A stretch of 64,000 nt of DNA. It comes from Schmidtea polychroa. Lineage: Eukaryota. The stretch spans positions 11,160,001-11,224,000 of the forward strand of contig CM097887.1 in the NCBI GenBank assembly GCA_044892525.1, in the 5' to 3' direction. Positions within the stretch are counted from its first letter, which is position 1. Each line of letters begins with the position of its first letter. Below are positions 27,161-64,000 of the stretch, piece after piece. The translations under genes were made by a program, and so were the position numbers. The notes below the pieces were generated by a model. The model ran no database searches, was not told where the DNA came from, and saw only the letters and a list, made by a program, of their open reading frames with translations.

Positions 27161-27577
27161 AATAATAAAATAATTATGGTAAGAACATAAAAATATTACT
27201 GATGAAAATTGTTATTATTTTAATTATAAATTATTAAACTAATACTTTGTAATAATTATAAAAATAAAATTAATAAAATATTGTAACAATACAATTAGAA
27301 TGATATCATTAGCCAATCAATTATGGATTAAATAGATTAATACAAGTAATTATTAACACAAGAAACATTTAAAAGAGCAACGTAGAGTTTTAATGTATAT
27401 CAAATAGTTGCCATTTTGAAATTATGCTCCCCAATTTAAAAGGTAATGCAATATAAATTTAGTTTCAAATCGTTTAGTTAGTGCATTAAATAAATAAATA
27501 ATAACAAATATATATTTACTGTTTGAAATGAAACTAATAAAATATATAAAATAAAAGCATTAATAATATATCAATTA

Positions 27578-27990
27578 TTAATAAGCGGGTAATATATTTA
27601 TGGAACTTTCAATTTCACAGCCCCTGAAGTTTTCCTAGTTCAACAGATGAAGCACCCTACAGTGTGTCAGCTGATATCTGGTCATTGGTGGCCACTGTTA
27701 TCTATATGATTACTGGTTAGGGATATCTCGATGAAAAATGGCATTTCTCTGCAAGAATTCTAGATCTTCGAGGATCTGCTTGTTGTATTTAATGACATAA
27801 TTTGTTGCTAAAGATCTTTCGATTTGATTCTCCAAAAACCTTAGAAAAAGGAATAATAATTCTAATAGTCATTTAGGTGTAATATTTATTACAAACTCTC
27901 AAATTTGCAAGCTATATTAATTGGATAATGTAAAATTAATAAGTGGCAATAGCAATTGGCTGTACTGTGCGTTCTATTTAAAGAAAAATT
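27578..27990 (+). pseudogene. Ser/Thr protein-kinase gene fragment (subdomains VIII-IX) forming the founder unit of the satellite
   Basis: 27602-27720 reads GTFNFTAPEVF / (1-nt frameshift) STDEAPYSVSADIWSLVATVIYMITG*. Copy 2 supplies the missing base (APEVLLSST). Confidence 0.8.
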
Positions 27991-30900
27991 AGCAGCAAAT
28001 GTATTGATGGAATTTTCCATTTCACAGCTCCTGAAGTTTTACTTAGTTCAACAAATGAAACACCCTAAACTGCGCAAGGTTATACTTGGTCTGTTTTTGC
28101 CACTGCTATCTATATGAATACTAAAAAATTGTATTTTCATGCAAGAATCCAGGCTCTTGAGGATCTGTTTGCTGTATTTAATGATATCATTTGTTGCTAA
28201 AGACCTTTCGATTTGATTCTCCAAAAGAAGGGGGATTTAGGGGTAATATTTATTATGAACTCTCAACTTCACAAGCTATATTAAATTGATGTAAAATTAG
28301 TAAGTGGCAATAGCACTTGACTGTACTGTGCTTTATATTTAATGAAAAATTAGCAGCAAATGTATTGATGGAACCTTCAATTTCACAGATCTTGAAGTTT
28401 TACTTAGTTCAACAAATGAAGCACCCTATACTGCGTCAGGTTATATTCGGTCTGTTGCTGCCACTGCTATCTATATGAATACTAAAAAATTGTATTTTCA
28501 TGCAAGAATTCCAGGCTCTTGAGGATCTGCTTGCTGTATTTAATGATATCATTTGTTGCTAAAGACCTTTGATTCTCCACTGCTATCTATATGAATACTA
28601 AAAAATTGTATTTTCATGCAAGAATTCCAGGCTCTTGAGAATCTGTTTGCTGTATTTAATGATATCATTTGTTGCTAAAGACCTTTCGATTTAATTCTCC
28701 ACTGCTATCTATATGAATACTAAAAAATTGTATTTTCATGCCAGAATTCCAGGCTTTTGAGGATCTGTTTGCTGTATTTAATGATATTATTTGTTGCTAA
28801 AGACCTTTCGATTTGATTCTCCACTGTTATCTATATGAATACTAAAAAATTGTATTTTCATGCCAGAATTCCAGGCTCTTGAGGATCTGTTTGCTGTATT
28901 TAATGATATTATTTGTTGCTAAAGACCTTTGATTCTCCACTGCTATCTAAATGAATACTAAAAAATTGTATTTTCATGCAAGAATTCCAGGCTCTTGAGG
29001 ATCTGCTTGCTGTATTTAATGATATCATTTGTTGCTAAAGACGTTTCGATTTGATTCTCCACTGCTATCTATATGAATACTAAAAAATTGTATTTTCATT
29101 CAAGAATTCCAGGCTCTTGAGGATCTGTTTGCTGTATTTAATGATATCATTTGTTGCTAAAGACCTTTCGATTTGATTCTCCAAAAAACCTTAGAAGGGG
29201 AATAATAATTCTAGCAGTGATTTAGGGGTAATATTTATTATGAACTCTCAACTTCACAAGCTATATTTATTGGATAATGTAAAATTAGTGAGGGGCAATA
29301 GCACTTGACTGTACTGTGCGTTCTATTTAAAAGAAAATCAGCGGCAAATGTATTGATGGAACCTTCAATTTCACAGATCTTGAAGTTTTACTTAGTTCAA
29401 CAGATGAAGCACCCTATACTGCGTCAGGTTATATTTGGTCTGTTGCTGCCACTGCTATCTATATGAATACTAAAAAATCGTATTTTCATGCCAGAATTCC
29501 AGGCTTTTGAAGATCTGTTTGCTGTATTTAATGATATTATTTGTTGCTAAAGACCTTTCGATTTGATTCTCCACTGCTATCTATATGAATACTAAAAAAT
29601 TGTATTTTCATGCAAGAATTCCAGGCTCTTGAGGATCTGTTTGCTGTATTTAATGATATCATTTGTTGCTAAAGACGTTTCGATTTGATTCTCCACTGCT
29701 ATCTATATGAATACTAAAAAATTGTATTTTCATGCCAGAATTCCAGGCTCTTGAGAATCTGTTTGCTGTATTTAATGATATTATTTGTTGCTAAAGACCT
29801 TTGATTCTCCACTGCTATCTAAATGAATACTAAAAAATTGTATTTTCATGCAAGAATCCAGGCTCTTGAGGATCTGTTTGCTGTATTTAATGATATCATT
29901 TGTTGCTAAAGACCTTTCGATTTGATTCTCCAAAAGAAGGGGGATTTAGGGGTAATATTTATTATGAACTCTCAACTTCACAAGCTATATTAAATTGATG
30001 TAAAATTAGTAAGTGGCAATAGCACTTGACTGTACTGTGCTTTATATTTAATGAAAAATTAGCAGCAAATGTATTGATGGAACCTTCAATTTCACAGATC
30101 TTGAAGTTTTACTTAGTTCAACAGATGAAGCACCCTATACTGCGTCAGGTTATATTTGGTCTGTTGCTGCCACTGCTATCTATATGAATACTAAAAAATT
30201 GTATTTTCATGCAAGAATTCCAGGCTCTTGAGGATCTGTTTGCTGTATTTAATGATATCATTTGTTGCTAAAGACGTTTAGATTTGATTCTCCACTGCTA
30301 TCTATATGAATACTAAAAAATCGTATTTTCATGCCAGAATTCCAGGCTTTTGAAGATCTGTTTGCTGTATTTAATGATATTATTTGTTGCTAAAGACCTT
30401 TCGATTTGATTCTCCACTGCTATCTATATGAATACTAAAAAATTGTATTTTCATGCAAGAATTCCAGGCTCTTAAGGATCTGTTTGCTGCATTTAATGAT
30501 ATCATTTGTTGCTAAAGACGTTTCGATTTGATTCTCCACTGCTATCTATATGAATACTAAAAAATTGTATTTTCATGCAAGAATTCCAAGCTCTTGAGGA
30601 TCTGTTTGCTGTATTTAATGATATCATTTGTTGCTAAAGACGTTTCGATTTGATTCTCCACTGCTATCTATATGAATACTAAAAAATCGTATTTTCATGC
30701 CAGAATTCCAGGCTTTTGAAGATCTGTTTGCTGTATTTAATGATATTATTTGTTGCTAAAGACCTTTCGATTTGATTCTCCACTGCTATCTATATGAATA
30801 CTAAAAAATTGTATTTTCATGCAAGAATTCCAGGCTCTTGAGGATCTGTTTGCTGTATTTAATGATATCATTTGTTGCTAAAGACGTTTCGATTTGATTC

Positions 30901-33900
30901 TCCACTGCTATCTATATGAATACTAAAAAATTGTATTTTCATTCAAGAATTCCAGGCTCTTGAGGATCTATTTGCTGTATTTAATGATATCATTTGTTGC
31001 TAAAGACCTTTCGATTTGATTCTCCAAAAAACCTTAGAAGGGGAATAATAATTCTAGCAGTGATTTAGGGGTAATATTTATTATGAACTCTCAACTTCAC
31101 AAGCTATATTTATTGGATAATGTAAAATTAGTGAGGGGCAATAGCACTTGACTGTACTGTGCGTTCTATTTAAAAGAAAATCAGCGGCAAATGTATTGAT
31201 GGAACCTTCAATTTCACAGATCTTGAAGTTTTACTTAGTTCAACAGGTGAAGCACCCTATACTGCGTCAGGTTATATTTGGTCTGTTGCTGCCACTGCTA
31301 TCTATATGAATACTAAAAAATTGTATTTTCATGCCAGAATTCCAGGCTTTTGAGGATCTGTTTGCTGTATTTAATGATATTATTTTTTGCTAAAGACCTT
31401 TCGATTTGATTCTCCACTGTTATCTATATGAATACTAAAAAATTGTATTTTCATGCCAGAATTCCAGGCTCTTGAGGATCTGTTTGCTGTATTTAATGAT
31501 ATCATTTGTTGCTAAAGACGTTTCGATTTGATTCTCCACTGCTATCTATATGAATACTAAAAAATTGTATTTTCATGCAAGAATTCCAAGCTCTTGAGGA
31601 TCTGTTTGCTGTATTTAATGATATCATTTGTTGCTAAAGACGTTTCGATTTGATTCTCCACTGCTATCTATATGAATACTAAAAAATCGTATTTTCATGC
31701 CAGAATTCCAGGCTTTTGAAGATCTGTTTGCTGTATTTAATGATATTATTTGTTGCTAAAGACCTTTCGATTTGATTCTCCACTGCTATCTATATGAATA
31801 CTAAAAAATTGTATTTTCATGCAAGAATTCCAGGCTCTTGAGGATCTGTTTGCTGTATTTAATGATATCATTTGTTGCTAAAGACGTTTCGATTTGATTC
31901 TCCACTGCTATCTATATGAATACTAAAAAATTGTATTTTCATGCCAGAATTCCAGGCTCTTGAGAATCTGTTTGCTGTATTTAATGATATTATTTGTTGC
32001 TAAAGACCTTTGATTCTCCACTGCTATCTAAATGAATACTAAAAAATTGTATTTTCATGCAAGAATCCAGGCTCTTGAGGATCTGTTTGCTGTATTTAAT
32101 GATATTATTTGTTGCTAAAGACCTTTCAATTTGATTCTCCAAAAGAAGGGGGATTTAGGGGTAATATTTATTATGAACTCTCAACTTCACAAGCTATATT
32201 AAATTGATGTAAAATTAGTAAGTGGCAATAGCACTTGACTGTACTGTGCTTTATATTTAATGAAAAATTAGCAGCAAATGTATTGATGGAACCTTCAATT
32301 TCACAGATCTTGAAGTTTTACTTAGTTCAACAAATGAAGCACCCTATACTGCGTCAGGTTATATTTGGTCTGTTGCTGCCACTGCTATCTATATGAATAC
32401 TAAAAAATTGTATTTTCATGCAAGAATTCCAGGCTCTTGAGGATCTGCTTGCTGTATTTAATGATATCATTTGTTGCTAAAGACGTTTCGATTTGATTCT
32501 CCACTGCTATCTATATGAATACTAAAAAATTGTATTTTCATTCAAGAATTCCAGGCTCTTGAGGATCTGTTTGCTGTATTTAATGATATCATTTGTTGCT
32601 AAAGACCTTTCGATTTGATTCTCCAAAAATCCTTAGAAGGGGAATAATAATTCTAGCAGTGATTTAGGGGTAATATTTATTATGAACTCTCAACTTCACA
32701 AGCTATATTTATTGGATAATGTAAAATTAGTGAGGGGCAATAGCACTTGACTGTACTGTGCGTTCTATTTAAAAGAAAATCAGCGGCAAATGTATTGATG
32801 GAACCTTCAATTTCACAGATCTTGAAGTTTTACTTAGTTCAACAGATGAAGCACCCTATACTGCGTCAGGTTATATTTGGTCTGTTGCTGCCACTGCTAT
32901 CTATATGAATACTAAAAAATCGTATTTTCATGCCAGAATTCCAGGCTTTTGAAGATCTGTTTGCTGTATTTAATGATATTATTTGTTGCTAAAGACCTTT
33001 CGATTTGATTCTCCACTGCTATCTATATGAATACTAAAAAATTGTATTTTCATGCAAGAATTCCAGGCTCTTGAGGATCTGTTTGCTGTATTTAATGATA
33101 TCATTTGTTGCTAAAGACGTTTCGATTTGATTCTCCACTGCTATCTATATGAATACTAAAAAATCGTATTTTCATGCCAGAATTCCAGGCTTTTGAAGAT
33201 CTGTTTGCTGTATTTAATGATATTATTTGTTGCTAAAGACCTTTCGATTTGATTCTCCACTGTTATCTATATGAATACTAAAAAATTGTATTTTCATGCC
33301 AGAATTCCAGGCTCTTGAGGATCTGTTTGCTGTATTTAATGATATCATTTGTTGCTAAAGACGTTTCGATTTGATTCTCCACTGCTATCTATATGAATAC
33401 TAAAAAATTGTATTTTCATGCAAGAATTCCAAGCTCTTGAGGATCTGTTTGCTGTATTTAATGATATCATTTGTTGCTAAAGACGTTTCGATTTGATTCT
33501 CCACTGCTATCTATATGAATACTAAAAAATCGTATTTTCATGCCAGAATTCCAGGCTTTTGAAGATCTGTTTGCTGTATTTAATGATATTATTTGTTGCT
33601 AAAGACCTTTCGATTTGATTCTCCACTGCTATCTATATGAATACTAAAAAATTGTATTTTCATGCAAGAATTCCAGGCTCTTGAGGATCTGTTTGCTGTA
33701 TTTAATGATATCATTTGTTGCTAAAGACGTTTCGATTTGATTCTCCACTGCTATCTATATGAATACTAAAAAATTGTATTTTCATGCCAGAATTCCAGGC
33801 TCTTGAGAATCTGTTTGCTGTATTTAATGATATTATTTGTTGCTAAAGACCTTTGATTCTCCACTGCTATCTAAATGAATACTAAAAAATTGTATTTTCA

Positions 33901-36900
33901 TGCAAGAATCCAGGCTCTTGAGGATCTGTTTGCTGTATTTAATGATATTATTTGTTGCTAAAGACCTTTCAATTTGATTCTCCAAAAGAAGGGGGATTTA
34001 GGGGTAATATTTATTATGAACTCTCAACTTCACAAGCTATATTAAATTGATGTAAAATTAGTAAGTGGCAATAGCACTTGACTGTACTGTGCTTTATATT
34101 TAATGAAAAATTAGCAGCAAATGTATTGATGGAACCTTCAATTTCACAGATCTTGAAGTTTTACTTAGTTCAACAAATGAAGCACCCTATACTGCGTCAG
34201 GTTATATTTGGTCTGTTGCTGCCACTGCTATCTATATGAATACTAAAAAATTGTATTTTCATGCAAGAATTCCAGGCTCTTGAGGATCTGCTTGCTGTAT
34301 TTAATGATATCATTTGTTGCTAAAGACGTTTCGATTTGATTCTCCACTGCTATCTATATGAATACTAAAAAATTGTATTTTCATTCAAGAATTCCAGGCT
34401 CTTGAGGATCTGTTTGCTGTATTTAATGATATCATTTGTTGCTAAAGACCTTTCGATTTGATTCTCCAAAAATCCTTAGAAGGGGAATAATAATTCTAGC
34501 AGTGATTTAGGGGTAATATTTATTATGAACTCTCAACTTCACAAGCTATATTTATTGGATAATGTAAAATTAGTGAGGGGCAATAGCACTTGACTGTACT
34601 GTGCGTTCTATTTAAAAGAAAATCAGCGGCAAATGTATTGATGGAACCTTCAATTTCACAGATCTTGAAGTTTTACTTAGTTCAACAGATGAAGCACCCT
34701 ATACTGCGTCAGGTTATATTTGGTCTGTTGCTGCCACTGCTATCTATATGAATACTAAAAAATCGTATTTTCATGCCAGAATTCCAGGCTTTTGAAGATC
34801 TGTTTGCTGTATTTAATGATATTATTTGTTGCTAAAGACCTTTCGATTTGATTCTCCACTGCTATCTATATGAATACTAAAAAATTGTATTTTCATGCAA
34901 GAATTCCAGGCTCTTGAGGATCTGTTTGCTGTATTTAATGATATCATTTGTTGCTAAAGACGTTTCGATTTGATTCTCCACTGCTATCTATATGAATACT
35001 AAAAAATCGTATTTTCATGCCAGAATTCCAGGCTTTTGAAGATCTGTTTGCTGTATTTAATGATATTATTTGTTGCTAAAGACCTTTCGATTTGATTCTC
35101 CACTGCTATCTATATGAATACTAAAAAATTGTATTTTCATGCAAGAATTCCAGGCCCTTGAGGATCTGTTTGCTGTATTTAATGATATCATTTGTTGCTA
35201 AAGACGTTTCGATTTGATTCTCCACTGCTATCTATATGAATACTAAAAAATTTTATTTTCATGCCAGAATTCCAGGCTCTTGAGAATCTGTTTGCTGTAT
35301 TTAATGATATTATTTGTTGCTAAAGACCTTTGATTCTCCACTGCTATCTAAATGAATACTAAAAAATTGTATTTTCATGCAAGAATCCAGGCTCTTGAGG
35401 ATCTGTTTGCTGTATTTAATGATATCATTTGTTGCTAAAGACCTTTCGATTTGATTCTCCAAAAGAAGGGGGATTTAGGGGTAATATTTATTATGAACTC
35501 TCAACTTCACAAGCTATATTAAATTGATGTAAAATTAGTAAGTGGCAATAGCACTTGACTGTACTGTGCTTTATATTTAATGAAAAATTAGCAGCAAATG
35601 TATTGATGGAACCTTCAATTTCACAGATCTTGAAGTTTTACTTAGTTCAACAAATGAAGCACCCTATACTGCGTCAGGTTATATTTGGTCTGTTGCTGCC
35701 ACTGCTATCTATATGAATACTAAAAAATTGTATTTTCATGCAAGAATTCCAGGCTCTTGAGGATCTGCTTGCTGTATTTAATGATATCATTTGTTGCTAA
35801 AGACGTTTCGATTTGATTCTCCACTGCTATCTATATGAATACTAAAAAATTGTATTTTCATTCAAGAATTCCAGGCTTTTGAGGATCTGTTTGCTGTATT
35901 TAATGATATCATTTGTTGCTAAAGACCTTTCGATTTGATTCTCCAAAAAACCTTAGAAGGGGAATAATAATTCTAGCAGTGATTTAGGGGTAATATTTAT
36001 TATGAACTCTCAACTTCACAAGCTATATTTATTGGATAATGTAAAATTAGTGAGGGGCAATAGCACTTGACTGTACTGTGCGTTCTATTTAAAAGAAAAT
36101 CAGCGGCAAATGTATTGATGGAACCTTCAATTTCACAGATCTTGAAGTTTTACTTAGTTCAACAGATGAAGCACCCTATACTGCGTCAGGTTATATTTGG
36201 TCTGTTGCTGCCACTGCTATCTATATGAATACTAAAAAATCGTATTTTCATGCCAGAATTCCAGGCTTTTGAAGATCTGTTTGCTGTATTTAATGATATT
36301 ATTTGTTGCTAAAGACCTTTCGATTTGATTCTCCACTGCTATCTATATGAATACTAAAAAATTGTATTTTCATGCAAGAATTCCAGGCTCTTGAGGATCT
36401 GTTTGCTGTATTTAATGATATCATTTGTTGCTAAAGACGTTTCGATTTGATTCTCCACTGCTATCTATATGAATACTAAAAAATTGTATTTTCATGCAAG
36501 AATTCCAAGCTCTTGAGGATCTGTTTGCTGTATTTAATGATATCATTTGTTGCTAAAGACGTTTAGATTTGATTCTCCACTGCTATCTATATGAATACTA
36601 AAAAATCGTATTTTCATGCCAGAATTCCAGGCTTTTGAAGATCTGTTTGCTGTATTTAATGATATTATTTGTTGCTAAAGACCTTTCGATTTGATTCTCC
36701 ACTGCTATCTATATGAATACTAAAAAATTGTATTTTCATGCAAGAATTCCAGGCTCTTGAGGATCTGTTTGCTGTATTTAATGATATCATTTGTTGCTAA
36801 AGACGTTTCGATTTGATTCTCCACTGCTATCTATATGAATACTAAAAAATTGTATTTTCATGCCAGAATTCCAGGCTCTTGAGAATCTGTTTGCTGTATT

Positions 36901-51900: not shown

Positions 51901-54900
51901 CAGGCTTTTGAAGATCTGTTTGCTGTATTTAATGATATTATTTGTTGCTAAAGACCTTTCGATTTGATTCTCCACTGCTATCTATATGAATACTAAAAAA
52001 TTGTATTTTCATGCAAGAATTCCAGGCTCTTGAGGATCTGTTTGCTGTATTTAATGATATCATTTGTTGCTAAAGACGTTTCGATTTGATTCTCCACTGC
52101 TATCTATATGAATACTAAAAAATTGTATTTTCATTCAAGAATTCCAGGCTCTTGAGGATCTATTTGCTGTATTTAATGATATCATTTGTTGCTAAAGACC
52201 TTTCGATTTGATTCTCCAAAAAACCTTAGAAGGGGAATAATAATTCTAGCAGTGATTTAGGGGTAATATTTATTATGAACTCTCAACTTCACAAGCTATA
52301 TTTATTGGATAATGTAAAATTAGTGAGGGGCAATAGCACTTGACTGTACTGTGCGTTCTATTTAAAAGAAAATCAGCGGCAAATGTATTGATGGAACCTT
52401 CAATTTCACAGATCTTGAAGTTTTACTTAGTTCAACAGGTGAAGCACCCTATACTGCGTCAGGTTATATTTGGTCTGTTGCTGCCACTGCTATCTATATG
52501 AATACTAAAAAATTGTATTTTCATGCCAGAATTCCAGGCTCTTGAGGATCTGTTTGCTGTATTTAATGATATCATTTGTTGCTAAAGACGTTTCGATTTG
52601 ATTCTCCACTGCTATCTATATGAATACTAAAAAATTGTATTTTCATGCCAGAATTCCAGGCTCTTGAGAATCTGTTTGCTGTATTTAATGATATTATTTG
52701 TTGCTAAAGACCTTTGATTCTCCACTGCTATCTAAATGAATACTAAAAAATTGTATTTTCATGCAAGAATCCAGGCTCTTGAGGATCTGTTTGCTGTATT
52801 TAATGATATTATTTGTTGCTAAAGACCTTTCGATTTGATTCTCCAAAAGAAGGGGGATTTAGGGGTAATATTTATTATGAACTCTCAACTTCACAAGCTA
52901 TATTAAATTGATGTAAAATTAGTAAGTGGCAATAGCACTTGACTGTACTGTGCTTTATATTTAATGAAAAATTAGCAGCAAATGTATTGATGGAACCTTC
53001 AATTTCACAGATCTTGAAGTTTTACTTAGTTCAACAGATGAAGCACCCTATACTGCGTCAGGTTATATTTGGTCTGTTGCTGCCACTGCTATCTATATGA
53101 ATACTAAAAAATCGTATTTTCATTCAAGAATTCCAGGCTCTTGAGGATCTGCTTGCTGTATTTAATGATATCATTTGTTGCTAAAGACGTTTCGATTTGA
53201 TTCTCCACTGCTATCTATATGAATACTAAAAAATTGTATTTTCATGCCAGAATTCCAGGCTCTTGAGAATCTATTTGCTGTATTTAATGATATTATTTGT
53301 TGCTAAAGACCTTTGATTCTCCACTGCTATCTAAATGAATACTAAAAAATTGTATTTTCATGCAAGAATCCAGGCTCTTGAGGATCTGTTTGCTGTATTT
53401 AATGATATTATTTGTTGCTAAAGACCTTTCGATTTGATTCTCCAAAAGAAAGGGGATTTAGGGGTAATATTTATTATGAACTCTCAACTTCACAAGCTAT
53501 ATTAAATTGATGTAAAATTAGTAAGTGGCAATAGCACTTGACTGTACTGTGCTTTATATTTAATGAAAAATTAGCAGCAAATGTATTGATGGAACCTTCA
53601 ATTTCACAGATCTTGAAGTTTTACTTAGTTCAACAGATGAAGCACCCTATACTGCGTCAGGTTATATTTGGTCTGTTGCTGCCACTGCTATCTATATGAA
53701 TACTAAAAAATCGTATTTTCATGCCAGAATTCCAGGCTTTTGAAGATCTGTTTGCTGTATTTAATGATATTATTTGTTGCTAAAGACCTTTCGATTTGAT
53801 TCTCCACTGCTATCTATATGAATACTAAAAAATTGTATTTTCATGCAAGAATTCCAGGCTCTTAAGGATCTGTTTGCTGCATTTAATGATATCATTTGTT
53901 GCTAAAGACGTTTCGATTTGATTCTCCACTGCTATCTATATGAATACTAAAAAATTGTATTTTCATGCAAGAATTCCAAGCTCTTGAGGATCTGTTTGCT
54001 GTATTTAATGATATCATTTGTTGCTAAAGACGTTTCGATTTGATTCTCCACTGCTATCTATATGAATACTAAAAAATCGTATTTTCATGCCAGAATTCCA
54101 GGCTTTTGAAGATCTGTTTGCTGTATTTAATGATATTATTTGTTGCTAAAGACCTTTCGATTTGATTCTCCACTGCTATCTATATGAATACTAAAAAATT
54201 GTATTTTCATGCAAGAATTCCAGGCTCTTGAGGATCTGTTTGCTGTATTTAATGATATCATTTGTTGCTAAAGACGTTTCGATTTGATTCTCCACTGCTA
54301 TCTATATGAATACTAAAAAATTGTATTTTCATTCAAGAATTCCAGGCTCTTGAGGATCTATTTGCTGTATTTAATGATATCATTTGTTGCTAAAGACCTT
54401 TCGATTTGATTCTCCAAAAAACCTTAGAAGGGGAATAATAATTCTAGCAGTGATTTAGGGGTAATATTTATTATGAACTCTCAACTTCACAAGCTATATT
54501 TATTGGATAATGTAAAATTAGTGAGGGGCAATAGCACTTGACTGTACTGTGCGTTCTATTTAAAAGAAAATCAGCGGCAAATGTATTGATGGAACCTTCA
54601 ATTTCACAGATCTTGAAGTTTTACTTAGTTCAACAGGTGAAGCACCCTATACTGCGTCAGGTTATATTTGGTCTGTTGCTGCCACTGCTATCTATATGAA
54701 TACTAAAAAATTGTATTTTCATGCCAGAATTCCAGGCTCTTGAGGATCTGTTTGCTGTATTTAATGATATCATTTGTTGCTAAAGACGTTTCGATTTGAT
54801 TCTCCACTGCTATCTATATGAATACTAAAAAATTGTATTTTCATGCCAGAATTCCAGGCTCTTGAGAATCTGTTTGCTGTATTTAATGATATTATTTGTT

Positions 54901-57900
54901 GCTAAAGACCTTTGATTCTCCACTGCTATCTAAATGAATACTAAAAAATTGTATTTTCATGCAAGAATCCAGGCTCTTGAGGATCTGTTTGCTGTATTTA
55001 ATGATATTATTTGTTGCTAAAGACCTTTCGATTTGATTCTCCAAAAGAAGGGGGATTTAGGGGTAATATTTATTATGAACTCTCAACTTCACAAGCTATA
55101 TTAAATTGATGTAAAATTAGTAAGTGGCAATAGCACTTGACTGTACTGTGCTTTATATTTAATGAAAAATTAGCAGCAAATGTATTGATGGAACCTTCAA
55201 TTTCACAGATCTTGAAGTTTTACTTAGTTCAACAAATGAAGCACCCTATACTGCGTCAGGTTATATTTGGTCTGTTGCTGCCACTGCTATCTATATGAAT
55301 ACTAAAAAATTGTATTTTCATGCAAGAATTCCAGGCTCTTGAGGATCTGCTTGCTGTATTTAATGATATCATTTGTTGCTAAAGACGTTTCGATTTGATT
55401 CTCCACTGCTATCTATATGAATACTAAAAAATTGTATTTTCATTCAAGAATTCCAGGCTCTTGAGGATCTGTTTGCTGTATTTAATGATATCATTTGTTG
55501 CTAAAGACCTTTCGATTTGATTCTCCAAAAATCCTTAGAAGGGGAATAATAATTCTAGCAGTGATTTAGGGGTAATATTTATTATGAACTCTCAACTTCA
55601 CAAGCTATATTTATTGGATAATGTAAAATTAGTGAGGGGCAATAGCACTTGACTGTACTGTGCGTTCTATTTAAAAGAAAATCAGCGGCAAATGTATTGA
55701 TGGAACCTTCAATTTCACAGATCTTGAAGTTTTACTTAGTTCAACAGATGAAGCACCCTATACTGCGTCAGGTTATATTTGGTCTGTTGCTGCCACTGCT
55801 ATGTATATGAATACTAAAAAATCGTATTTTCATGCCAGAATTCCAGGCTTTTGAAGATCTGTTTGCTGTATTTAATGATATTATTTGTTGCTAAAGACCT
55901 TTCGATTTGATTCTCCACTGCTATCTATATGAATACTAAAAAATTGTATTTTCATGCAAGAATTCCAGGCTCTTGAGGATCTGTTTGCTGTATTTAATGA
56001 TATCATTTGTTGCTAAAGACGTTTCGATTTGATTCTCCACTGCTATCTATATGAATACTAAAAAATCGTATTTTCATGCCAGAATTCCAGGCTTTTGAAG
56101 ATCTGTTTGCTGTATTTAATGATATTATTTGTTGCTAAAGACCTTTCGATTTGATTCTCCACTGCTATCTATATGAATACTAAAAAATTGTATTTTCATG
56201 CAAGAATTCCAGGCTCTTGAGGATCTGTTTGCTGTATTTAATGATATCATTTGTTGCTAAAGACGTTTCGATTTGATTCTCCACTGCTATCTATATGAAT
56301 ACTAAAAAATTGTATTTTCATGCCAGATTTCCAGGCTCTTGAGAATCTGTTTGCTGTATTTAATGATATTATTTGTTGCTAAAGACCTTTGATTCTCCAC
56401 TGCTATCTAAATGAATACTAAAAAATTGTATTTTCATGCAAGAATCCAGGCTCTTGAGGATCTGTTTGCTGTATTTAATGATATCATTTGTTGCTAAAGA
56501 CCTTTCGATTTGATTCTCCAAAAGAAGGGGGATTTAGGGGTAATATTTATTATGAACTCTCAACTTCACAAGCTATATTAAATTGATGTAAAATTAGTAA
56601 GTGGCAATAGCACTTGACTGTACTGTGCTTTATATTTAATGAAAAATTAGCAGCAAATGTATTGATGGAACCTTCAATTTCACAGATCTTGAAGTTTTAC
56701 TTAGTTCAACAAATGAAGCACCCTATACTGCGTCAGGTTATATTTGGTCTGTTGCTGCCACTGCTATCTATATGAATACTAAAAAATTGTATTTTCATGC
56801 AAGAATTCCAGGCTCTTGAGGATCTGCTTGCTGTATTTAATGATATCATTTGTTGCTAAAGACGTTTCGATTTGATTCTCCACTGCTATCTATATGAATA
56901 CTAAAAAATTGTATTTTCATTCAAGAATTCCAGGCTTTTGAGGATCTGTTTGCTGTATTTAATGATATCATTTGTTGCTAAAGACCTTTCGATTTGATTC
57001 TCCAAAAAACCTTAGAAGGGGAATAATAATTCTAGCAGTGATTTAGGGGTAATATTTATTATGAACTCTCAACTTCACAAGCTATATTTATTGGATAATG
57101 TAAAATTAGTGAGGGGCAATAGCACTTGACTGTACTGTGCGTTCTATTTAAAAGAAAATCAGCGGCAAATGTATTGATGGAACCTTCAATTTCACAGATC
57201 TTGAAGTTTTACTTAGTTCAACAGATGAAGCACCCTATACTGCGTCAGGTTATATTTGGTCTGTTGCTGCCACTGCTATCTATATGAATACTAAAAAATT
57301 GTATTTTCATGCCAGAATTCCAGGCTCTTGAGGATCTGTTTGCTGTATTTAATGATATCATTTGTTGCTAAAGACGTTTCGATTTGATTCTCCACTGCTA
57401 TCTATATGAATACTAAAAAATTGTATTTTCATGCCAGAATTCCAGGCTCTTGAGAATCTGTTTGCTGTATTTAATGATATTATTTGTTGCTAAAGACCTT
57501 TGATTCTCCACTGCTATCTAAATGAATACTAAAAAATTGTATTTTCATGCAAGAATCCAGGCTCTTGAGGATCTGTTTGCTGTATTTAATGATATTATTT
57601 GTTGCTAAAGACCTTTCGATTTGATTCTCCAAAAGAAGGGGGATTTAGGGGTAATATTTATTATGAACTCTCAACTTCACAAGCTATATTAAATTGATGT
57701 AAAATTAGTAAGTGGCAATAGCACTTGACTGTACTGTGCTTTATATTTAATGAAAAATTAGCAGCAAATGTATTGATGGAACCTTCAATTTCACAGATCT
57801 TGAAGTTTTACTTAGTTCAACAAATGAAGCACCCTATACTGCGTCAGGTTATATTTGGTCTGTTGCTGCCACTGCTATCTATATGAATACTAAAAAATTG

Positions 57901-60900
57901 TATTTTCATGCAAGAATTCCAGGCTCTTGAGGATCTGCTTGCTGTATTTAATGATATCATTTGTTGCTAAAGACGTTTCGATTTGATTCTCCACTGCTAT
58001 CTATATGAATACTAAAAAATTGTATTTTCATTCAAGAATTCCAGGCTCTTGAGGATCTGTTTGCTGTATTTAATGATATCATTTGTTGCTAAAGACCTTT
58101 CGATTTGATTCTCCAAAAATCCTTAGAAGGGGAATAATAATTCTAGCAGTGATTTAGGGGTAATATTTATTATGAACTCTCAACTTCACAAGCTATATTT
58201 ATTGGATAATGTAAAATTAGTGAGGGGCAATAGCACTTGACTGTACTGTGCGTTCTATTTAAAAGAAAATCAGCGGCAAATGTATTGATGGAACCTTCAA
58301 TTTCACAGATCTTGAAGTTTTACTTAGTTCAACAGATGAAGCACCCTATACTGCGTCAGGTTATATTTGGTCTGTTGCTGCCACTGCTATGTATATGAAT
58401 ACTAAAAAATCGTATTTTCATGCCAGAATTCCAGGCTTTTGAAGATCTGTTTGCTGTATTTAATGATATTATTTGTTGCTAAAGACCTTTCGATTTGATT
58501 CTCCACTGCTATCTATATGAATACTAAAAAATTGTATTTTCATGCAAGAATTCCAGGCTCTTGAGGATCTGTTTGCTGTATTTAATGATATCATTTGTTG
58601 CTAAAGACGTTTCGATTTGATTCTCCACTGCTATCTATATGAATACTAAAAAATCGTATTTTCATGCCAGAATTCCAGGCTTTTGAAGATCTGTTTGCTG
58701 TATTTAATGATATTATTTGTTGCTAAAGACCTTTCGATTTGATTCTCCACTGCTATCTATATGAATACTAAAAAATTGTATTTTCATGCAAGAATTCCAG
58801 GCTCTTGAGGATCTGTTTGCTGTATTTAATGATATCATTTGTTGCTAAAGACGTTTCGATTTGATTCTCCACTGCTATCTATATGAATACTAAAAAATTG
58901 TATTTTCATGCCAGATTTCCAGGCTCTTGAGAATCTGTTTGCTGTATTTAATGATATTATTTGTTGCTAAAGACCTTTGATCTCCACTGCTATCTAAATG
59001 AATACTAAAAAAAATTGTATTATTCATGCAAGAATCCAGGCTCTTGAGGATCTGTTTGCTGTATTTAATGATTTCATTTGTTGCTAAAGACCTTTCGATT
59101 TGATTCTCCAAAAGAAGGGGGATTTAGGGGTAATATTTATTATGAACTCTCAACTTCACAAGCTATATTAAATTGATGTAAAATTAGTAAGTGGCAATAG
59201 CACTTGACTGTACTGTGCTTTATATTTAATGAAAAATTAGCAGCAAATGTATTGATGGAACCTTCAATTTCACAGATCTTGAAGTTTTACTTAGTTCAAC
59301 AAATGAAGCACCCTATACTGCGTCAGGTTATATTTGGTCTGTTGCTGCCACTGCTATCTATATGAATACTAAAAAATTGTATTTTCATGCAAGAATTCCA
59401 GGCTCTTGAGGATCTGCTTGCTGTATTTAATGATATCATTTGTTGCTAAAGACGTTTCGATTTGATTCTCCACTGCTATCTATATGAATACTAAAAAATT
59501 GTATTTTCATTCAAGAATTCCAGGCTTTTGAGGATCTGTTTGCTGTATTTAATGATATCATTTGTTGCTAAAGACCTTTCGATTTGATTCTCCAAAAAAC
59601 CTTAGAAGGGGAATAATAATTCTAGCAGTGATTTAGGGGTAATATTTATTATGAACTCTCAACTTCACAAGCTATATTTATTGGATAATGTAAAATTAGT
59701 GAGGGGCAATAGCACTTGACTGTACTGTGCGTTCTATTTAAAAGAAAATCAGCGGCAAATGTATTGATGGAACCTTCAATTTCACAGATCTTGAAGTTTT
59801 ACTTAGTTCAACAGATGAAGCACCCTATACTGCGTCAGGTTATATTTGGTCTGTTGCTGCCACTGCTATCTATATGAATACTAAAAAATCGTATTTTCAT
59901 GCCAGAATTCCAGGCTTTTGAAGATCTGTTTGCTGTATTTAATGATATTATTTGTTGCTAAAGACCTTTCGATTTGATTCTCCACTGCTATCTATATGAA
60001 TACTAAAAAATTGTATTTTCATGCAAGAATTCCAGGCTCTTGAGGATCTGTTTGCTGTATTTAATGATATCATTTGTTGCTAAAGACGTTTCGATTTGAT
60101 TCTCCACTGCTATCTATATGAATACTAAAAAATTGTATTTTCCTGCAAGAATTCCAAGCTCTTGAGGATCTGTTTGCTGTATTTAATGATATCATTTGTT
60201 GCTAAAGACGTTTAGATTTGATTCTCCACTGCTATCTATATGAATACTAAAAAATCGTATTTTCATGCCAGAATTCCAGGCTTTTGAAGATCTGTTTGCT
60301 GTATTTAATGATATTATTTGTTGCTAAAGACCTTTCGATTTGATTCTCCACTGCTATCTATATGAATACTAAAAAATTGTATTTTCATGCAAGAATTCCA
60401 GGCTCTTGAGGATCTGTTTGCTGTATTTAATGATATCATTTGTTGCTAAAGACGTTTCGATTTGATTCTCCACTGCTATCTATATGAATACTAAAAAATT
60501 GTATTTTCATGCCAGAATTCCAGGCTCTTGAGAATCTGTTTGCTGTATTTAATGATATTATTTGTTGCTAAAGACCTTTGATTCTCCACTGCTATCTAAA
60601 TGAATACTAAAAAATTGTATTTTCATGCAAGAATCCAGGCTCTTGAGGATCTGTTTGCTGTATTTAATGATATTATTTGTTGCTAAAGACCTTTCGATTT
60701 GATTCTCCAAAAGAAGGGGGATTTAGGGGTAATATTTATTATGAACTCTCAACTTCACAAGCTATATTAAATTGATGTAAAATTAGTAAGTGGCAATAGC
60801 ACTTGACTGTACTGTGCTTTATATTTAATGAAAAATTAGCAGCAAATGTATTGATGGAACCTTCAATTTCACAGATCTTGAAGTTTTACTTAGTTCAACA

Positions 60901-63900
60901 GATGAAGCACCCTATACTGCGTCAGGTTATATTTGGTCTGTTGCTGCCACTGCTATCTATATGAATACTAAAAAATCGTATTTTCATGCCAGAATTCCAG
61001 GCTTTTGAAGATCTGTTTGCTGTATTTAATGATATTATTTGTTGCTAAAGACCTTTCGATTTGATTCTCCACTGCTATCTATATGAATACTAAAAAATTG
61101 TATTTTCATGCAAGAATTCCAGGCTCTTAAGGATCTGTTTGCTGCATTTAATGATATCATTTGTTGCTAAAGACGTTTCGATTTGATTCTCCACTGCTAT
61201 CTATATGAATACTAAAAAATTGTATTTTCATGCAAGAATTCCAAGCTCTTGAGGATCTGTTTGCTGTATTTAATGATATCATTTGTTGCTAAAGACGTTT
61301 CGATTTGATTCTCCACTGCTATCTATATGAATACTAAAAAATCGTATTTTCATGCCAGAATTCCAGGCTTTTGAAGATCTGTTTGCTGTATTTAATGATA
61401 TTATTTGTTGCTAAAGACCTTTCGATTTGATTCTCCACTGCTATCTATATGAATACTAAAAAATTGTATTTTCATGCAAGAATTCCAGGCTCTTGAGGAT
61501 CTGCTTGCTGTATTTAATGATATCATTTGTTGCTAAAGACGTTTCGATTTGATTCTCCACTGCTATCTATATGAATACTAAAAAATTGTATTTTCATTCA
61601 AGAATTCCAGGCTCTTGAGGATCTGTTTGCTGTATTTAATGATATCATTTGTTGCTAAAGACCTTTCGATTTGATTCTCCAAAAATCCTTAGAAGGGGAA
61701 TAATAATTCTAGTAGTGATTTAGGGGTAATATTTATTATGAACTCTCAACTTCACAAGCTATATTTATTGGATAATGTAAAATTAGTGAGGGGCAATAGC
61801 ACTTGACTGTACTGTGCGTTCTATTTAAAAGAAAATCAGCGGCAAATGTATTGATGGAACCTTCAATTTCACAGATCTTGAAGTTTTACTTAGTTCAACA
61901 GATGAAGCACCCTATACTGCGTCAGGTTATATTTGGTCTGTTGCTGCCACTGCTATCTATATGAATACTAAAAAATCGTATTTTCATGCCAGAATTCCAG
62001 GCTTTTGAAGATCTGTTTGCTGTATTTAATGATATTATTTGTTGCTAAAGACCTTTCGATTTGATTCTCCACTGCTATCTATATGAATACTAAAAAATTG
62101 TATTTTCATGCAAGAATTCCAGGCTCTTGAGGATCTGTTTGCTGTATTTAATGATATCATTTGTTGCTAAAGACGTTTCGATTTGATTCTCCACTGCTAT
62201 CTATATGAATACTAAAAAATCGTATTTTCATGCCAGAATTCCAGGCTTTTGAAGATCTGTTTGCTGTATTTAATGATATTATTTGTTGCTAAAGACCTTT
62301 CGATTTGATTCTCCACTGCTATCTATATGAATACTAAAAAATTGTATTTTCATGCAAGAATTCCAGGCTCTTGAGGATCTGTTTGCTGTATTTAATGATA
62401 TCATTTGTTGCTAAAGACGTTTCGATTTGATTCTCCACTGCTATCTATATGAATACTAAAAAATTGTATTTTCATGCCAGAATTCCAGGCTCTTGAGAAT
62501 CTGTTTGCTGTATTTAATGATATTATTTGTTGCTAAAGACCTTTGATTCTCCACTGCTATCTAAATGAATACTAAAAAATTGTATTTTCATGCAAGAATC
62601 CAGGCTCTTGAGGATCTGTTTGCTGTATTTAATGATATCATTTGTTGCTAAAGACCTTTCGATTTGATTCTCCAAAAGAAGGGGGATTTAGGGGTAATAT
62701 TTATTATGAACTCTCAACTTCACAAGCTATATTAAATTGATGTAAAATTAGTAAGTGGCAATAGCACTTGACTGTACTGTGCTTTATATTTAATGAAAAA
62801 TTAGCAGCAAATGTATTGATGGAACCTTCAATTTCACAGATCTTGAAGTTTTACTTAGTTCAACAAATGAAGCACCCTATACTGCGTCAGGTTATATTTG
62901 GTCTGTTGCTGCCACTGCTATCTATATGAATACTAAAAAATTGTATTTTCATGCAAGAATTCCAGGCTCTTGAGGATCTGCTTGCTGTATTTAATGATAT
63001 CATTTGTTGCTAAAGACGTTTCGATTTGATTCTCCACTGCTATCTATATGAATACTAAAAAATTGTATTTTCATTCAAGAATTCCAGGCTCTTGAGGATC
63101 TGTTTGCTGTATTTAATGATATCATTTGTTGCTAAAGACCTTTCGATTTGATTCTCCAAAAAACCTTAGAAGGGGAATAATAATTCTAGCAGTGATTTAG
63201 GGGTAATATTTATTATGAACTCTCAACTTCACAAGCTATATTTATTGGATAATGTAAAATTAGTGAGGGGCAATAGCACTTGACTGTACTGTGCGTTCTA
63301 TTTAAAAGAAAATCAGCGGCAAATGTATTGATGGAACCTTCAATTTCACAGATCTTGAAGTTTTACTTAGTTCAACAGATGAAGCACCCTATACTGCGTC
63401 AGGTTATATTTGGTCTGTTGCTGCCACTGCTATCTATATGAATACTAAAAAATCGTATTTTCATGCCAGAATTCCAGGCTTTTGAAGATCTGTTTGCTGT
63501 ATTTAATGATATTATTTGTTGCTAAAGACCTTTCGATTTGATTCTCCACTGCTATCTATATGAATACTAAAAAATTGTATTTTCATGCAAGAATTCCAGG
63601 CTCTTGAGGATCTGTTTGCTGTATTTAATGATATCATTTGTTGCTAAAGACGTTTCGATTTGATTCTCCACTGCTATCTATATGAATACTAAAAAATTGT
63701 ATTTTCATGCAAGAATTCCAAGCTCTTGAGGATCTGTTTGCTGTATTTAATGATATCATTTGTTGCTAAAGACGTTTCGATTTGATTCTCCACTGCTATC
63801 TATATGAATACTAAAAAATTGTATTTTCATGCAAGAATTCCAAGCTCTTGAGGATCTGTTTGCTGTATTTAATGATATCATTTGTTGCTAAAGACGTTTC

Positions 63901-64000
63901 GATTTGATTCTCCACTGCTATCTATATGAATACTAAAAAATCGTATTTTCATGCCAGAATTCCAGGCTTTTGAAGATCTGTTTGCTGTATTTAATGATAT
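27578..64000 (+). repeat. Nested satellite array: ~208 monomers of 122 bp (116/121-bp variants) in runs of 2-13, separated by ~44 linkers (A type 240 bp, B type 268 bp); open at the window end
   Basis: Monomer CCACTGCTATCTATATGAATACTAAAAAATTGTATTTTCATGCAAGAATTCCAGGCTCTTGAGGATCTGTTTGCTGTATTTAATGATATCATTTGTTGCTAAAGACGTTTCGATTTGATTCT, with starts at e.g. 30170, 30292 and 30414. Linker plus terminal monomer is 361 bp (A) or 390 bp (B); the founder unit is 407 bp. Confidence 0.97.

What the first reader, a model, noticed from the sequence alone, without database searches (positions are those of the whole stretch)
27578..64000. >36-kb satellite array apparently born from a protein-kinase gene fragment
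Seen: joining the first two units gives GTFNFTAPEVLLSSTDEAPYSVSADIWSLVATVIYMITG. Established: GT..(Y/F).APE and D(I/V)WS.G are subdomains VIII and IX of eukaryotic Ser/Thr kinases, and ADIWSLGCTVIEMATG is typical of STE11/MAP3K kinases. Seen: a G-C dipeptide lies about 23 codons upstream of APE, where DFG would sit (speculative). Seen: every homogenised linker keeps this frame open for 58 codons (KISSKCIDGTFNFTDLEVLLSSTDEAPYTASGYIWSVAATAIYMNTKKLYFHARIPGS*), but APE has become DLE and DIW has become YIW. Inference: a kinase exon or pseudogene seeded a large satellite, and the 122-bp monomer starts inside the alphaF-helix coding segment. Satellites traceable to host coding sequence are uncommon, and this one could make sense/antisense or small RNAs homologous to the parent kinase.
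Basis: partly seen in the sequence, partly recalled or inferred. Interest (0 to 1): 0.9.

Follow-up and report, generated by a model that had tools for sequence, protein, structure and literature searches.

The report
Satellite built from rearranged kinase-gene piece
A tandem-repeat array of more than 36 kb in an AT-rich invertebrate genome was built from a small, rearranged piece of a MEKK2/3-type protein-kinase gene (one whole exon, a probable intron and part of the next exon), which is an uncommon origin for a satellite, but nothing shows that it does anything today.

Summary
A tandem array runs from 27580 to the window end: 162 short units (122/116 bp) and 44 long units (361/390 bp), 97.7-99.7% alike within each class.

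- **Plus strand.** The diverged edge copy reads GTFNFTAPEV..SSTDEAPYSVSADIWSLVATVIYMITG (Pfam Pkinase E = 1.2e-4).
- **Minus strand.** It reads FLENQIERSLATNYVIKYNKQILEDLEFLQRNAIFHRDI, the kinase alphaE helix and HRD loop. This antisense piece, not the APE/DIWS piece, makes up about 100 of the 122 bp of the monomer.
- **Parent family.** An exhaustive search with the minus piece found a MEKK2/3-like kinase (P0002, E = 1.7e-6). P0002 also matches the unused plus piece (14/19 and 8/10 residues).
- **Exon match.** The minus piece equals one conserved MEKK2/3 exon, with polypyrimidine-AG upstream. The plus piece starts at the next exon's acceptor (AANVL) and lacks the DFG and activation-loop codons.

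I found no hairpin, no intact gene, no other kinase exon in the flank, and no convincing transcription.

Verdict: a kinase-gene-derived satellite, probably neutral; a new variant of a known kind. The scan had already noted the minus-strand reading on this same DNA (s1-204269).

The parts
27580..64000 (.). Whole tandem array. It runs off the window end; earlier scan notes place another element about 486 bp beyond.
   Evidence: TRF; unit census; left edge from alignment to the consensus; earlier notes.
27580..27717 (+). Edge copy of the plus-strand kinase piece (P+1 loop, APE, alphaF). GTFNFTAPEV is at 27602-27631, a 1-nt deletion lies within 27632-27636, and SSTDEAPYSVSADIWSLVATVIYMITG is at 27637-27717.
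   Evidence: Translations; Pfam Pkinase E = 1.2e-4, profile positions 159-193; z = 14-19 against P0002/P0006; 14/19 and 8/10 identity to P0002.
27718..27721 (.). 4-nt junction (tagg) between the two oppositely oriented kinase pieces.
   Evidence: Direct reading.
27722..27839 (-). Edge copy of a complete MEKK2/3 exon in antisense orientation: (R)FLENQIERSLATNYVIKYNKQILEDLEFLQRNAIFHRDI. The HRDI codons are at 27733-27722. It is 118 nt against the conserved 130 nt.
   Evidence: Pfam Pkinase E = 0.0037, profile positions 92-124; PDB best hit MAP3K2, E = 0.009; P0002 E = 1.7e-6 among 1.84 billion proteins; z = 11-14; exon boundaries compared with Physella and Branchiostoma genes; kinase neighbours in the Atlas search.
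27840..27876 (-). Intron-like 3' end preceding that exon on the minus strand: polypyrimidine tract plus AG (...attattattcctttttctaag|).
   Evidence: Direct reading; it sits within 2 nt of the conserved acceptor position.
27877..27992 (+). Candidate complete intron (116 nt, GT...AG, 27% GC) between the two exon pieces. It has no kinase coding signal.
   Evidence: This assignment is an inference, not shown.
27993..28122 (+). Second copy of the plus-strand piece. It starts in phase 1 after attag| with (G)CA GCA AAT GTA TTG = AANVL (27993-28006), shifts frame, and continues GIFHFTAPEVLLSSTNETP*TAQGYTWSVFATAIYMNT from 28009. The DFG and activation-loop codons are missing.
   Evidence: The [AG]AN[IV]L motif arises in 4 of 20,000 shuffles and is present in all 44 long units; conserved genes begin this exon HRDIK|(A/G)AN(I/V)L; translation.
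27715..27733 (.). 18 nt present only in the edge copy: the G codon of ITG, the junction, and the HRDI codons on the minus strand. They are deleted in every homogenised unit.
   Evidence: Alignment of unit 1 to the 390-bp consensus.
28100..64000 (.). Homogenised core, at least 95% identical to the class consensus from here on, built of kb-scale higher-order blocks (lags 1477, 1599, 2198, 6751 and 14308 bp).
28577..28698 (-). Example 122-bp monomer: 22 nt of plus-strand alphaF coding plus about 100 nt antisense to the alphaD/alphaE exon (ENQIE.SLATNDIIKYSKQILKSLEFLHENTIF).
   Evidence: Pfam Pkinase E = 0.0049 for the neighbouring 116-bp copy at 28485-28586; consensus z = 5-10; CCA-flanked junctions.
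29059..29448 (.). Example 390-bp long unit (A type, descended from the 408-bp edge unit).
29809..30169 (.). Example 361-bp long unit (B type, with a 29-bp deletion in the intron-like spacer).

Best explanation
This is a satellite-type tandem array whose roughly 400-bp ancestral unit is a rearranged genomic piece of a MEKK2/3-like (STE11-family MAP3K) protein-kinase gene.

The unit contains four parts:
(a) on the minus strand, one whole exon (alphaD-alphaE-HRD) preceded by the last ~37 nt of its upstream intron;
(b) a probable complete 116-nt intron;
(c) on the plus strand, the first part of the next exon, which starts AANVL, has lost the DFG and activation-loop codons, and continues GTFNFTAPEV...ADIWS...ITG;
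(d) a 4-nt tail-to-tail junction between the two coding pieces.

The most economical history has five steps. A contiguous [intron end - exon - intron - exon start] segment suffered a small inversion of its first part. The resulting ~400-bp segment was duplicated in tandem. It diverged into two unit types (390 and 361 bp). A deletion between CCA microhomologies produced a 122-bp sub-repeat, which expanded. Finally, kb-scale blocks were amplified and homogenised by unequal exchange.

The outermost copy escaped homogenisation and still shows HRD, APE and DIWS. The core has lost them.

The array is most likely neutral, non-coding repetitive DNA.

Shown: the array, the kinase homology on both strands, the exon correspondence, and the homogenisation pattern. 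Inferred: the intron assignment, the inversion, the order of events, and the lack of function.
For: Array anatomy and homogeneity.

Kinase homology, plus strand: Pfam Pkinase E = 1.2e-4; PDB hits are STE-group kinases; z = 14-19.

Kinase homology, minus strand: Pfam E = 0.0037 and 0.0049; PDB best hits MAP3K2 and MAP3K5; an exhaustive HMMER search of 1.84 billion proteins returns kinases, with P0002 at E = 1.7e-6; z = 11-14; 85 of the 100 nearest Atlas clusters are kinase families.

One parent lineage: P0002 was retrieved with the minus piece only, yet it matches the plus piece at 14/19 and 8/10 residues. With P0006, it is the only MEKK2/3 protein of about 120 to score above 20 bits on the plus piece. 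The relatives of P0002 are named MAP3K2/MAP3K3 and carry PB1 plus kinase domains.

Exon correspondence: Physella and Branchiostoma genes share a 130-nt exon, ag|GSV(K/L)D...HRD(I/L)K-G|gt. Our minus piece begins within 2 nt of that acceptor, after a polypyrimidine-AG, and ends 4 nt before the donor.

Next-exon start: AANVL lies in the correct phase after an AG. The motif arises in 4 of 20,000 shuffles and is kept in all 44 long units.

Edge copy is the most kinase-like: alignment scores are 85 and 79 for the edge copy against 44 and 64 for the core consensus. The HRDI codons occur only in unit 1. Unit 1 is single-copy in reads, while the monomer part is several-hundred-fold deeper.

No RNA-gene origin.
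Against: All Pfam scores (17-22 bits) are below the gathering cut-off of 31.7, as expected for short fragments.

The plus piece scores about as well against STE20-type STK10/SLK (about 22 bits) as against P0002 (23.9 bits). Its APEV-to-Y linker (about 9 residues, bridging the frameshift) is longer than the 5 residues in MEKK2/3. Two different STE kinases could therefore have contributed.

The intron after ADIW|S, conserved in Physella and Branchiostoma, is absent from the plus piece.

The 116-nt 'intron' rests only on GT...AG ends, AT-richness and the absence of coding signal. The GT is seen only in the edge copy; the core has GG.

The parent gene of this genome was not available, so nucleotide-level descent is unproven.

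Non-function is an absence-of-evidence argument. One RNA-labelled run does hold the repeat.
Confidence: 0.8

Rival explanations
1. The two coding pieces come from two different STE-group kinase genes or pseudogenes: a MEKK-type gene for the minus-strand exon and an STE20/SLK-type or ASK-type gene for the plus-strand piece. They would have been brought together by rearrangement before amplification.
For: The best PDB hits for the plus piece are STK10/SLK (E = 0.0017) and MAP3K2 does not appear in that list. The APEV-to-Y linker length resembles SLK/ASK rather than MEKK2/3. AANVLM also resembles the SLK-type AGNVLM (own knowledge of kinase motifs).
Against: It shares the unusual GTF.F.APEV and YS.SADIWS..ATV strings. 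The two pieces are adjacent exons of one gene in the conserved gene structure.
Confidence: 0.12
2. The unit is cargo of a transposable element that captured kinase gene fragments (transduplication of the Pack-MULE, Helitron or Turmoil kind). Under this reading the array is an expanded internal tandem repeat of that element.
For: Gene fragments in opposite orientations with retained intron pieces are typical of captured cargo. The neighbourhood is transposon-rich: BED/hAT and piggyBac-like remnants, and a large retroelement just beyond the window according to earlier notes. Transduplication is documented in animals (PMC2572040, listed).
Against: No terminal repeats or element ends flank the array edge, and no significant inverted repeats were found. 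The diverged edge unit is at single-copy depth in reads, which does not fit a dispersed family. No other copy was seen in the scan's notes, although that blank carries no weight.
Confidence: 0.08
3. The array is a functional small-RNA or antisense-RNA source (piRNA/siRNA cluster) that regulates the parent MEKK2/3 gene, analogous to Su(Ste) or hpRNA loci.
For: Most of the array is antisense to a kinase exon if transcribed from the plus strand. One RNA-labelled run (X7) holds 42% of the sampled words of a homogenised stretch and yields contigs of depth 6-30.
Against: Six other RNA-labelled runs of the same species hold none, including one from the same study. X7 also covers flanking non-genic repeats at similar depth, and a several-hundred-copy repeat is easily picked up from DNA carry-over. 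The unit has no hairpin-forming inverted repeat. The core has drifted away from kinase coding sequence, and similarity to the closest available kinase transcript is only 54-70% with no identical run longer than 6 nt (that transcript is from another organism).
Confidence: 0.06
4. The kinase resemblance is chance in AT-rich repetitive DNA.
For: Every Pfam score is below the gathering threshold. The fragments are short and were chosen after inspecting six frames.
Against: Two independent pieces hit the same family at different, appropriate profile positions. Scores are z = 11-19 against shuffles. P0002 reaches E = 1.7e-6 in a 1.84-billion-protein library and cross-validates on the unused piece. 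The boundaries match a conserved exon.
Confidence: 0.02

Closest known systems
Satellite DNAs seeded by pre-existing functional sequences (rDNA intergenic spacer, transposable elements, MITE-like elements), as reviewed in PMC5615363
   Same: Head-to-tail array, concerted homogenisation, higher-order repeat blocks, a less homogenised edge copy, and a sub-repeat born inside a longer unit.
   Different: The seed here is a protein-coding gene segment (exon - intron - exon of a MAP3K). That review names rDNA spacers and transposable elements as seeds but not coding genes.
Stellate / Suppressor of Stellate repeats of Drosophila melanogaster, which derive from a casein kinase 2 beta-subunit-like gene (own knowledge, not checked here)
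   Same: Tandem arrays descended from a host protein-coding gene of the kinase signalling world. Antisense orientation is relevant to a possible small-RNA function.
   Different: Those units are whole genes or large gene parts that are transcribed, and Su(Ste) piRNAs have a demonstrated function. Here the unit is 122-390 bp of broken exon fragments with no demonstrated RNA.
Coding macrosatellites such as D4Z4 (DUX4) and RS447 (USP17) (own knowledge, not checked here)
   Same: Gene-derived tandem repeats tens of kb long with copy-number variation.
   Different: Those units are 3-5 kb and carry an intact open reading frame. Here the longest open frames are 54-77 codons, with no start-to-stop gene and with the catalytic motifs lost.
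MEKK2/MEKK3 (MAP3K2/MAP3K3) kinases, STE11 family: the inferred parent
   Same: KY.(R/K)QIL..L.FLH.N.I.HRDI, AAN(I/V)L, GT....APEV and ADIWS..(A/C)TV.EM.TG strings. The exon GSVKD...HRDIK and the phase-1 intron after it also match.
   Different: Only about 85 of roughly 260 kinase-domain codons are present, on opposite strands, with frameshifts, stops and loss of DFG. No PB1 domain or N-lobe lies nearby.

Membership tests
Satellite DNA / tandem repeat array | Many head-to-tail copies forming a long uninterrupted array | tested here: met
   207 complete units plus a truncated one over 36.4 kb, with no interspersed foreign sequence.
Satellite DNA / tandem repeat array | Concerted homogenisation with higher-order repeat structure and a diverged edge copy | tested here: met
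   97.7-99.7% identity to the class consensus; only 21 distinct 122-mers; block lags of 1.5-14 kb. The edge (27580-28099) is 82-84% identical to the core, and units from 28100 on are at least 95%.
Satellite DNA / tandem repeat array | Non-coding (no intact gene in the unit) | tested here: met
   The longest open frames are 59 codons (plus strand) and 77 (minus strand). Motifs are degraded (APE to DLE, DIW to YIW, HRD deleted).
Protein kinase domain (Pfam PF00069), as the origin of the sequence | Significant profile match | tested here: inconclusive
   E = 1.2e-4, 0.0037 and 0.0049 at appropriate profile positions, but 17-22 bits is below the 31.7-bit gathering cut-off. Independent searches support homology.
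Protein kinase domain (Pfam PF00069), as the origin of the sequence | Catalytic-loop HRD, APE and D.WS.G motifs | tested here: met
   HRDI at 27733-27722 (minus strand), APE within 27602-27631, and ADIWS within 27637-27717, in the edge copy only.
Protein kinase domain (Pfam PF00069), as the origin of the sequence | DFG motif / subdomain VII between HRD and APE | tested here: not met
   Nothing convincing in the spacer on either strand: best shuffle fractions are 5-6 of 200, from low-complexity N-run matches outside the DFG segment. The region appears to be deleted between AANVL and GTF.
Protein kinase domain (Pfam PF00069), as the origin of the sequence | Collinear, single-strand arrangement of subdomains (an intact or simply decayed gene) | tested here: not met
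   Subdomains V-VIb are on the minus strand and VIII-IX on the plus strand, joined tail to tail.
MEKK2/3 (STE11-family MAP3K), as parent | Closest sequence relatives are MEKK2/3 | tested here: met
   Minus piece: MAP3K2 is the top PDB hit, and P0002 is the top true hit in 1.84 billion proteins, with relatives named MAP3K2/3. Plus piece: P0002 and P0006 score highest but STK10 is comparable.
MEKK2/3 (STE11-family MAP3K), as parent | Shared exon-intron structure | tested here: inconclusive
   The HRD exon boundaries and the phase-1 start of the next exon match. The conserved intron after ADIW is absent. The parent gene of this genome is not available.
MEKK2/3 (STE11-family MAP3K), as parent | N-terminal PB1 domain and the rest of the kinase domain nearby | tested here: not met
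   No other kinase or PB1 exon in 1-27600 (tblastn, all hits at E of about 0.8 or worse).
Hairpin-RNA / inverted-repeat small-RNA locus | Long inverted repeat able to form dsRNA within one transcript | tested here: not met
   Only 13-18-nt arms at 76-85% complementarity. The two kinase pieces do not overlap in sequence.
Hairpin-RNA / inverted-repeat small-RNA locus | Transcription and small RNAs | tested here: inconclusive
   One of seven RNA-labelled runs holds the repeat, at low depth that cannot be told from DNA carry-over. No small-RNA data were available.

The most novel reading that the evidence does not exclude
The array, which is mostly antisense to a MEKK2/3 exon, is transcribed in some tissue or stage and yields small RNAs or antisense RNA that act on the parent MAP3K gene. 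Alternatively, it has become a structural (for example centromere-associated) satellite whose copy number differs strongly between strains. Either way it would be a traceable case of a signalling-gene fragment being recruited as a regulatory or structural repeat.
Probability: 0.07. Interest if true: 0.75.

Novelty: new variant of a known kind. Interest (0 to 1): 0.45.

Why it matters
The seeds of satellites are usually untraceable, or turn out to be transposons or rDNA spacers. Here nearly the whole ancestral unit can be assigned to named parts of an identifiable host gene: an intron end, an exon, a probable intron, and the start of the next exon.

A single non-homogenised edge copy preserves the earlier state. 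That gives an unusually readable, stepwise record of satellite birth:
- rearrangement of a gene piece;
- tandem duplication of a ~400-bp segment;
- split into two unit types;
- birth of a 122-bp sub-repeat at a microhomology;
- amplification of kb-scale blocks.

It also shows concerted evolution erasing the coding motifs. In addition, the rough read depths hint at a large copy-number difference between two DNA samples of the species, which would make the array useful for studying satellite turnover on a short timescale. No function is indicated, so the value is evolutionary and mechanistic rather than physiological.

Tried and rejected
1. It is not significant on either strand.

2. Fold-back inverted duplication or hairpin. 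There are no long inverted repeats. There is no sense-oriented relic of the exon beside the candidate intron (p = 0.95), and no similarity between the two arms.

3. A decayed parent gene in place. No further kinase or PB1 exons lie in the 27.6-kb left flank.

4. RNA-gene or tRNA origin. No match.

5. P0001, the nominal top hit of the exhaustive search (E = 5.5e-14). It is an unrelated repeat protein whose score is the sum of 11 weak repeats, so I discarded it.

6. Locating P0002 on a contig. It is not on record; it is a UniParc/MetaClust entry without an organism.

7. Nucleotide comparison with the P0006 transcript (L001). It comes from another, GC-richer organism (54-70% identity) and is uninformative for descent or small-RNA targeting.

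8. Identifying the organism from the SERF/ZNF706-like gene. The result is only 'invertebrate animal', with a flatworm as the best named hit at 73%.

9. Looking for the 58-codon frame in public protein predictions. No candidate was found.

10. The scan's notes by sequence. Blank, which carries no weight.

11. The rotifer satellite paper PMC8447722. Those monomers are 154 and 143 bp and are unrelated.

12. The first version of my alignment script timed out and was rewritten.
Full report
**1. What is there**

The window is AT-rich (about 32% GC) eukaryotic DNA. Its first 27.5 kb hold transposon remnants and a few genes: BED/hAT, a piggyBac-like fragment, a RING-finger ORF and a SERF/ZNF706-like gene.

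From 27580 to the window end lies an uninterrupted tandem array. I anchored units on the 23-mer that begins each monomer. This gives 138 units of 122 bp, 24 of 116 bp, 23 of 361 bp and 19 of 390 bp, preceded by a 408-bp edge unit.

Within each class the copies are 97.7-99.7% identical to their consensus, and only 21 distinct 122-mers exist. The order of variants shows kb-scale blocks copied again and again, with lags of 1477, 1599, 2198, 6751 and 14308 bp.

Divergence is a step, not a gradient. The stretch 27580-28099 is only 82-84% like the core, and everything from 28100 on is at least 95% like it.

**2.

GTFNFTAPEV (27602-27631) and SSTDEAPYSVSADIWSLVATVIYMITG (27637-27717) are both present. 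They are separated by a 1-nt deletion that unit 2 lacks.

Bridged with X, the peptide hits Pfam Pkinase at E = 1.2e-4, profile positions 159-193. Against solved structures it finds only STE-group kinases: STK10/SLK at E = 0.0017, then PAK and MAP3K5. The 58/59-codon open frame is present in 43 of 44 long units. It is a by-product of near-identical copies: it has no start-to-stop gene structure, and its motifs are degraded.

**3.

The minus strand of the same edge unit (27839-27722) reads (R)FLENQIERSLATNYVIKYNKQILEDLEFLQRNAIFHRDI. That is the alphaD/alphaE helices and the HRD catalytic loop of a kinase.
- Pfam Pkinase gives E = 0.0037 at profile positions 92-124.
- The best solved structures are MAP3K2 (E = 0.009) and MAP3K5.
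- 85 of the 100 nearest clusters in the language-model Atlas are kinase families.

The same antisense reading, without the HRD codons, fills about 100 of the 122 bp of every monomer. For the 34-residue piece of a 116-bp copy (28485-28586) Pfam gives E = 0.0049, and the 122-bp monomer consensus scores z = 5-10.

The bulk of the 36 kb is therefore antisense alphaE-exon sequence, not the APE/DIWS segment. The two coding pieces meet tail to tail with 4 nt between them (27718-27721).

**4. Which kinase**

An exhaustive HMMER search of 1.84 billion representative proteins with the 52-residue minus piece returned five hits. The top one, P0001, is an unrelated repeat protein whose score sums 11 weak repeats, so I set it aside. 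The others are kinases, led by P0002 (E = 1.7e-6, 52% identity).

The relatives of P0002 are MAP3K2/MAP3K3 proteins with PB1 and kinase domains. P0006 is a full-length relative at 77% identity, taken from a transcript assembly.

P0002 was selected without using the plus piece, yet it carries GTFYFMAPEV (8/10 identical to ours) and YSNSADIWSLGATVVEMLT (14/19 identical). On one scale, the plus peptide scores 23.9 bits against P0002 and 22.0 against P0006. The other MEKK2/3 proteins fetched score only 11-15 bits. STK10 is comparable at about 22 bits.

My frameshift-tolerant protein-to-DNA alignment, with shuffled-DNA controls, gives z = 14-19 for the plus piece and z = 11-14 for the minus piece of the edge unit. 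The homogenised consensus scores lower: 44 against 85, and 64 against 79. The edge copy is thus the most kinase-like, as expected of a copy that escaped homogenisation.

**5. Exon anatomy**

I fetched two annotated MAP3K2/3 loci, from Physella (L002) and Branchiostoma (L003), and mapped their exons.

Both have a 130-nt exon that starts ag|GG. TC. GT. (G-S-V-K/L-D) and ends HRD(I/L)K-G|gt. Our minus piece is preceded on its own strand by ...attattattcctttttctaag| and starts within 2 nt of that acceptor. It ends 4 nt before the conserved donor. It is 118 nt long: 130 minus 4 at the end, minus two codons, minus 2 nt at the start.

In both reference genes the next exon begins, in phase 1, with (A/G)AN(I/V)LRD. 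In every long unit of the array, right after ...aaaattag|, the sequence reads CA GCA AAT GTA TTG. With the G carried over from the previous exon, this spells A-A-N-V-L. The motif arises in only 4 of 20,000 shuffles of the spacer.

One codon later the frame shifts and GTFNFTAPEV follows. So about 35-55 codons, covering DFG and the activation loop, are missing. A targeted search confirms this: no remnant of DFG or subdomain VII is found on either strand.

Between the intron-like end (27840-27876, minus strand) and this acceptor lie 116 nt (27877-27992). They start GT, end AG, are 27% GC and have no coding signal. I read them as the intron that separated the two exons in the parent. This is an inference.

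One conserved intron (after ADIW) is absent from our plus piece. This fits either intron loss in the parent lineage or a different parent.

**6. Reconstruction (inferred)**

The whole ~408-bp unit can be accounted for as [last 37 nt of intron 0 + exon 1], inverted, next to [intron 1 + start of exon 2]. This is what a small inversion inside a contiguous ~0.5-kb gene piece would give.

I found no sign of a fold-back duplication or hairpin. No further exons of such a gene lie in the left flank, so the parent lies elsewhere or is lost.

The later steps are visible in the sequence:
- the split into 390- and 361-bp types, the second carrying a 29-bp spacer deletion;
- loss of 18 nt, including the HRDI codons, in all but the edge copy;
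- birth of the 122-bp unit by loss of the spacer plus most of the plus piece between two CCA triplets (junctions; the same joint is seen in reads; also noted earlier as s1-220313);
- a 6-bp deletion giving the 116-bp variant;
- block amplification.

**7. Reads**

In the sample that probably gave the assembly (X1), the edge unit has word depth of about 18. The monomer part reaches 6,000-9,000, which implies several hundred copies. That may exceed the ~208 copies in this window, but contig depths are crude.

Another DNA sample (X5) carries a 95.5%-identical edge unit at depth 42, but the monomer part reaches only about 700. This hints at a large copy-number difference and needs proper data.

One RNA-labelled run (X7) holds homogenised units at depth 6-30 and has no coverage of the edge unit. 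Six other RNA-labelled runs, including one from the same study, hold none. For a repeat this abundant, that cannot be told apart from DNA carry-over, so transcription is unproven.

**8. Comparison with what is known, and novelty**

A standard review says satellites can in principle arise from any sequence. As documented seeds it names rDNA spacers and transposable elements, not coding genes (PMC5615363). My searches found no kinase-derived satellite.

Gene-derived tandem arrays do exist: Stellate/Su(Ste), D4Z4 and RS447 (own knowledge). Those units are whole genes or kb-sized. Here the units are 122-390 bp of exon and intron debris.

I therefore rate it as a new variant of a known kind. The kinase origin is well supported (about 0.9). 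The single-gene exon-intron-exon-with-inversion model is moderately supported (about 0.55). The most probable present state is neutral satellite DNA.

**9. Limits**

The genome outside the window could not be searched, so the parent gene, other arrays and the organism remain unknown. The SERF/ZNF706-like gene says only 'invertebrate animal', with a flatworm as the best named hit at 73%. All Pfam scores are below gathering thresholds. The plus piece could stem from another STE kinase.

Noticed in passing
window 11754-13223 (-): Intact 489-codon intronless ORF with an N-terminal RING finger (zf-RING_2, E = 1e-9) and a long uncharacterised C-terminal part. It is the only long intact ORF in the flank.
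   Followed up: partly
window 6706-6933 (-): Intronless 75-codon SERF/ZNF706-like gene (SERF-like_N E = 2e-10 plus a C2H2 finger). The best named relative is from the flatworm Macrostomum lignano (73%). No source lists this genome's own protein.
   Followed up: partly
window 2-1900 (+), 19432-19713 (-), 22213-22374 (-): Transposon remnants. A BED-finger/hAT-like transposase is broken into several ORFs, and there is a piggyBac-type (DDE_Tnp_1_7) fragment. The 93-codon ORF at 19432-19713 had no Pfam hit; I call it transposase-like by eye only.
   Followed up: partly
window 27339-27441 and 27472-27557: Reads of two DNA samples show a 99-101-bp presence/absence difference at 27339/27341-27441. A short piece at 27472-27557 has very high depth (up to about 1,600) and different neighbours elsewhere. 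The array's left flank is therefore itself made of dispersed repeats.
   Followed up: no
P0002 (UniParc UPI0005FFC045, no organism): The closest kinase in public data has its N-lobe-to-HRD segment duplicated head to tail (residues 1-158 repeated from about 159). This could be an assembly or prediction artefact, or a real partial duplication of the same exon region that seeded this satellite.
   Followed up: no
P0001 (810 aa, from the exhaustive search): An unrelated predicted protein made of about 11 tandem ~46-residue repeats (…GILKCTKQCLLDFHFFKWNSQMYQTV…) topped the search through summed weak matches. This shows how translated satellites pollute protein databases and can inflate E-values.
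   Followed up: partly
window 23968-24009: Perfect (TA)21 microsatellite.
   Followed up: no
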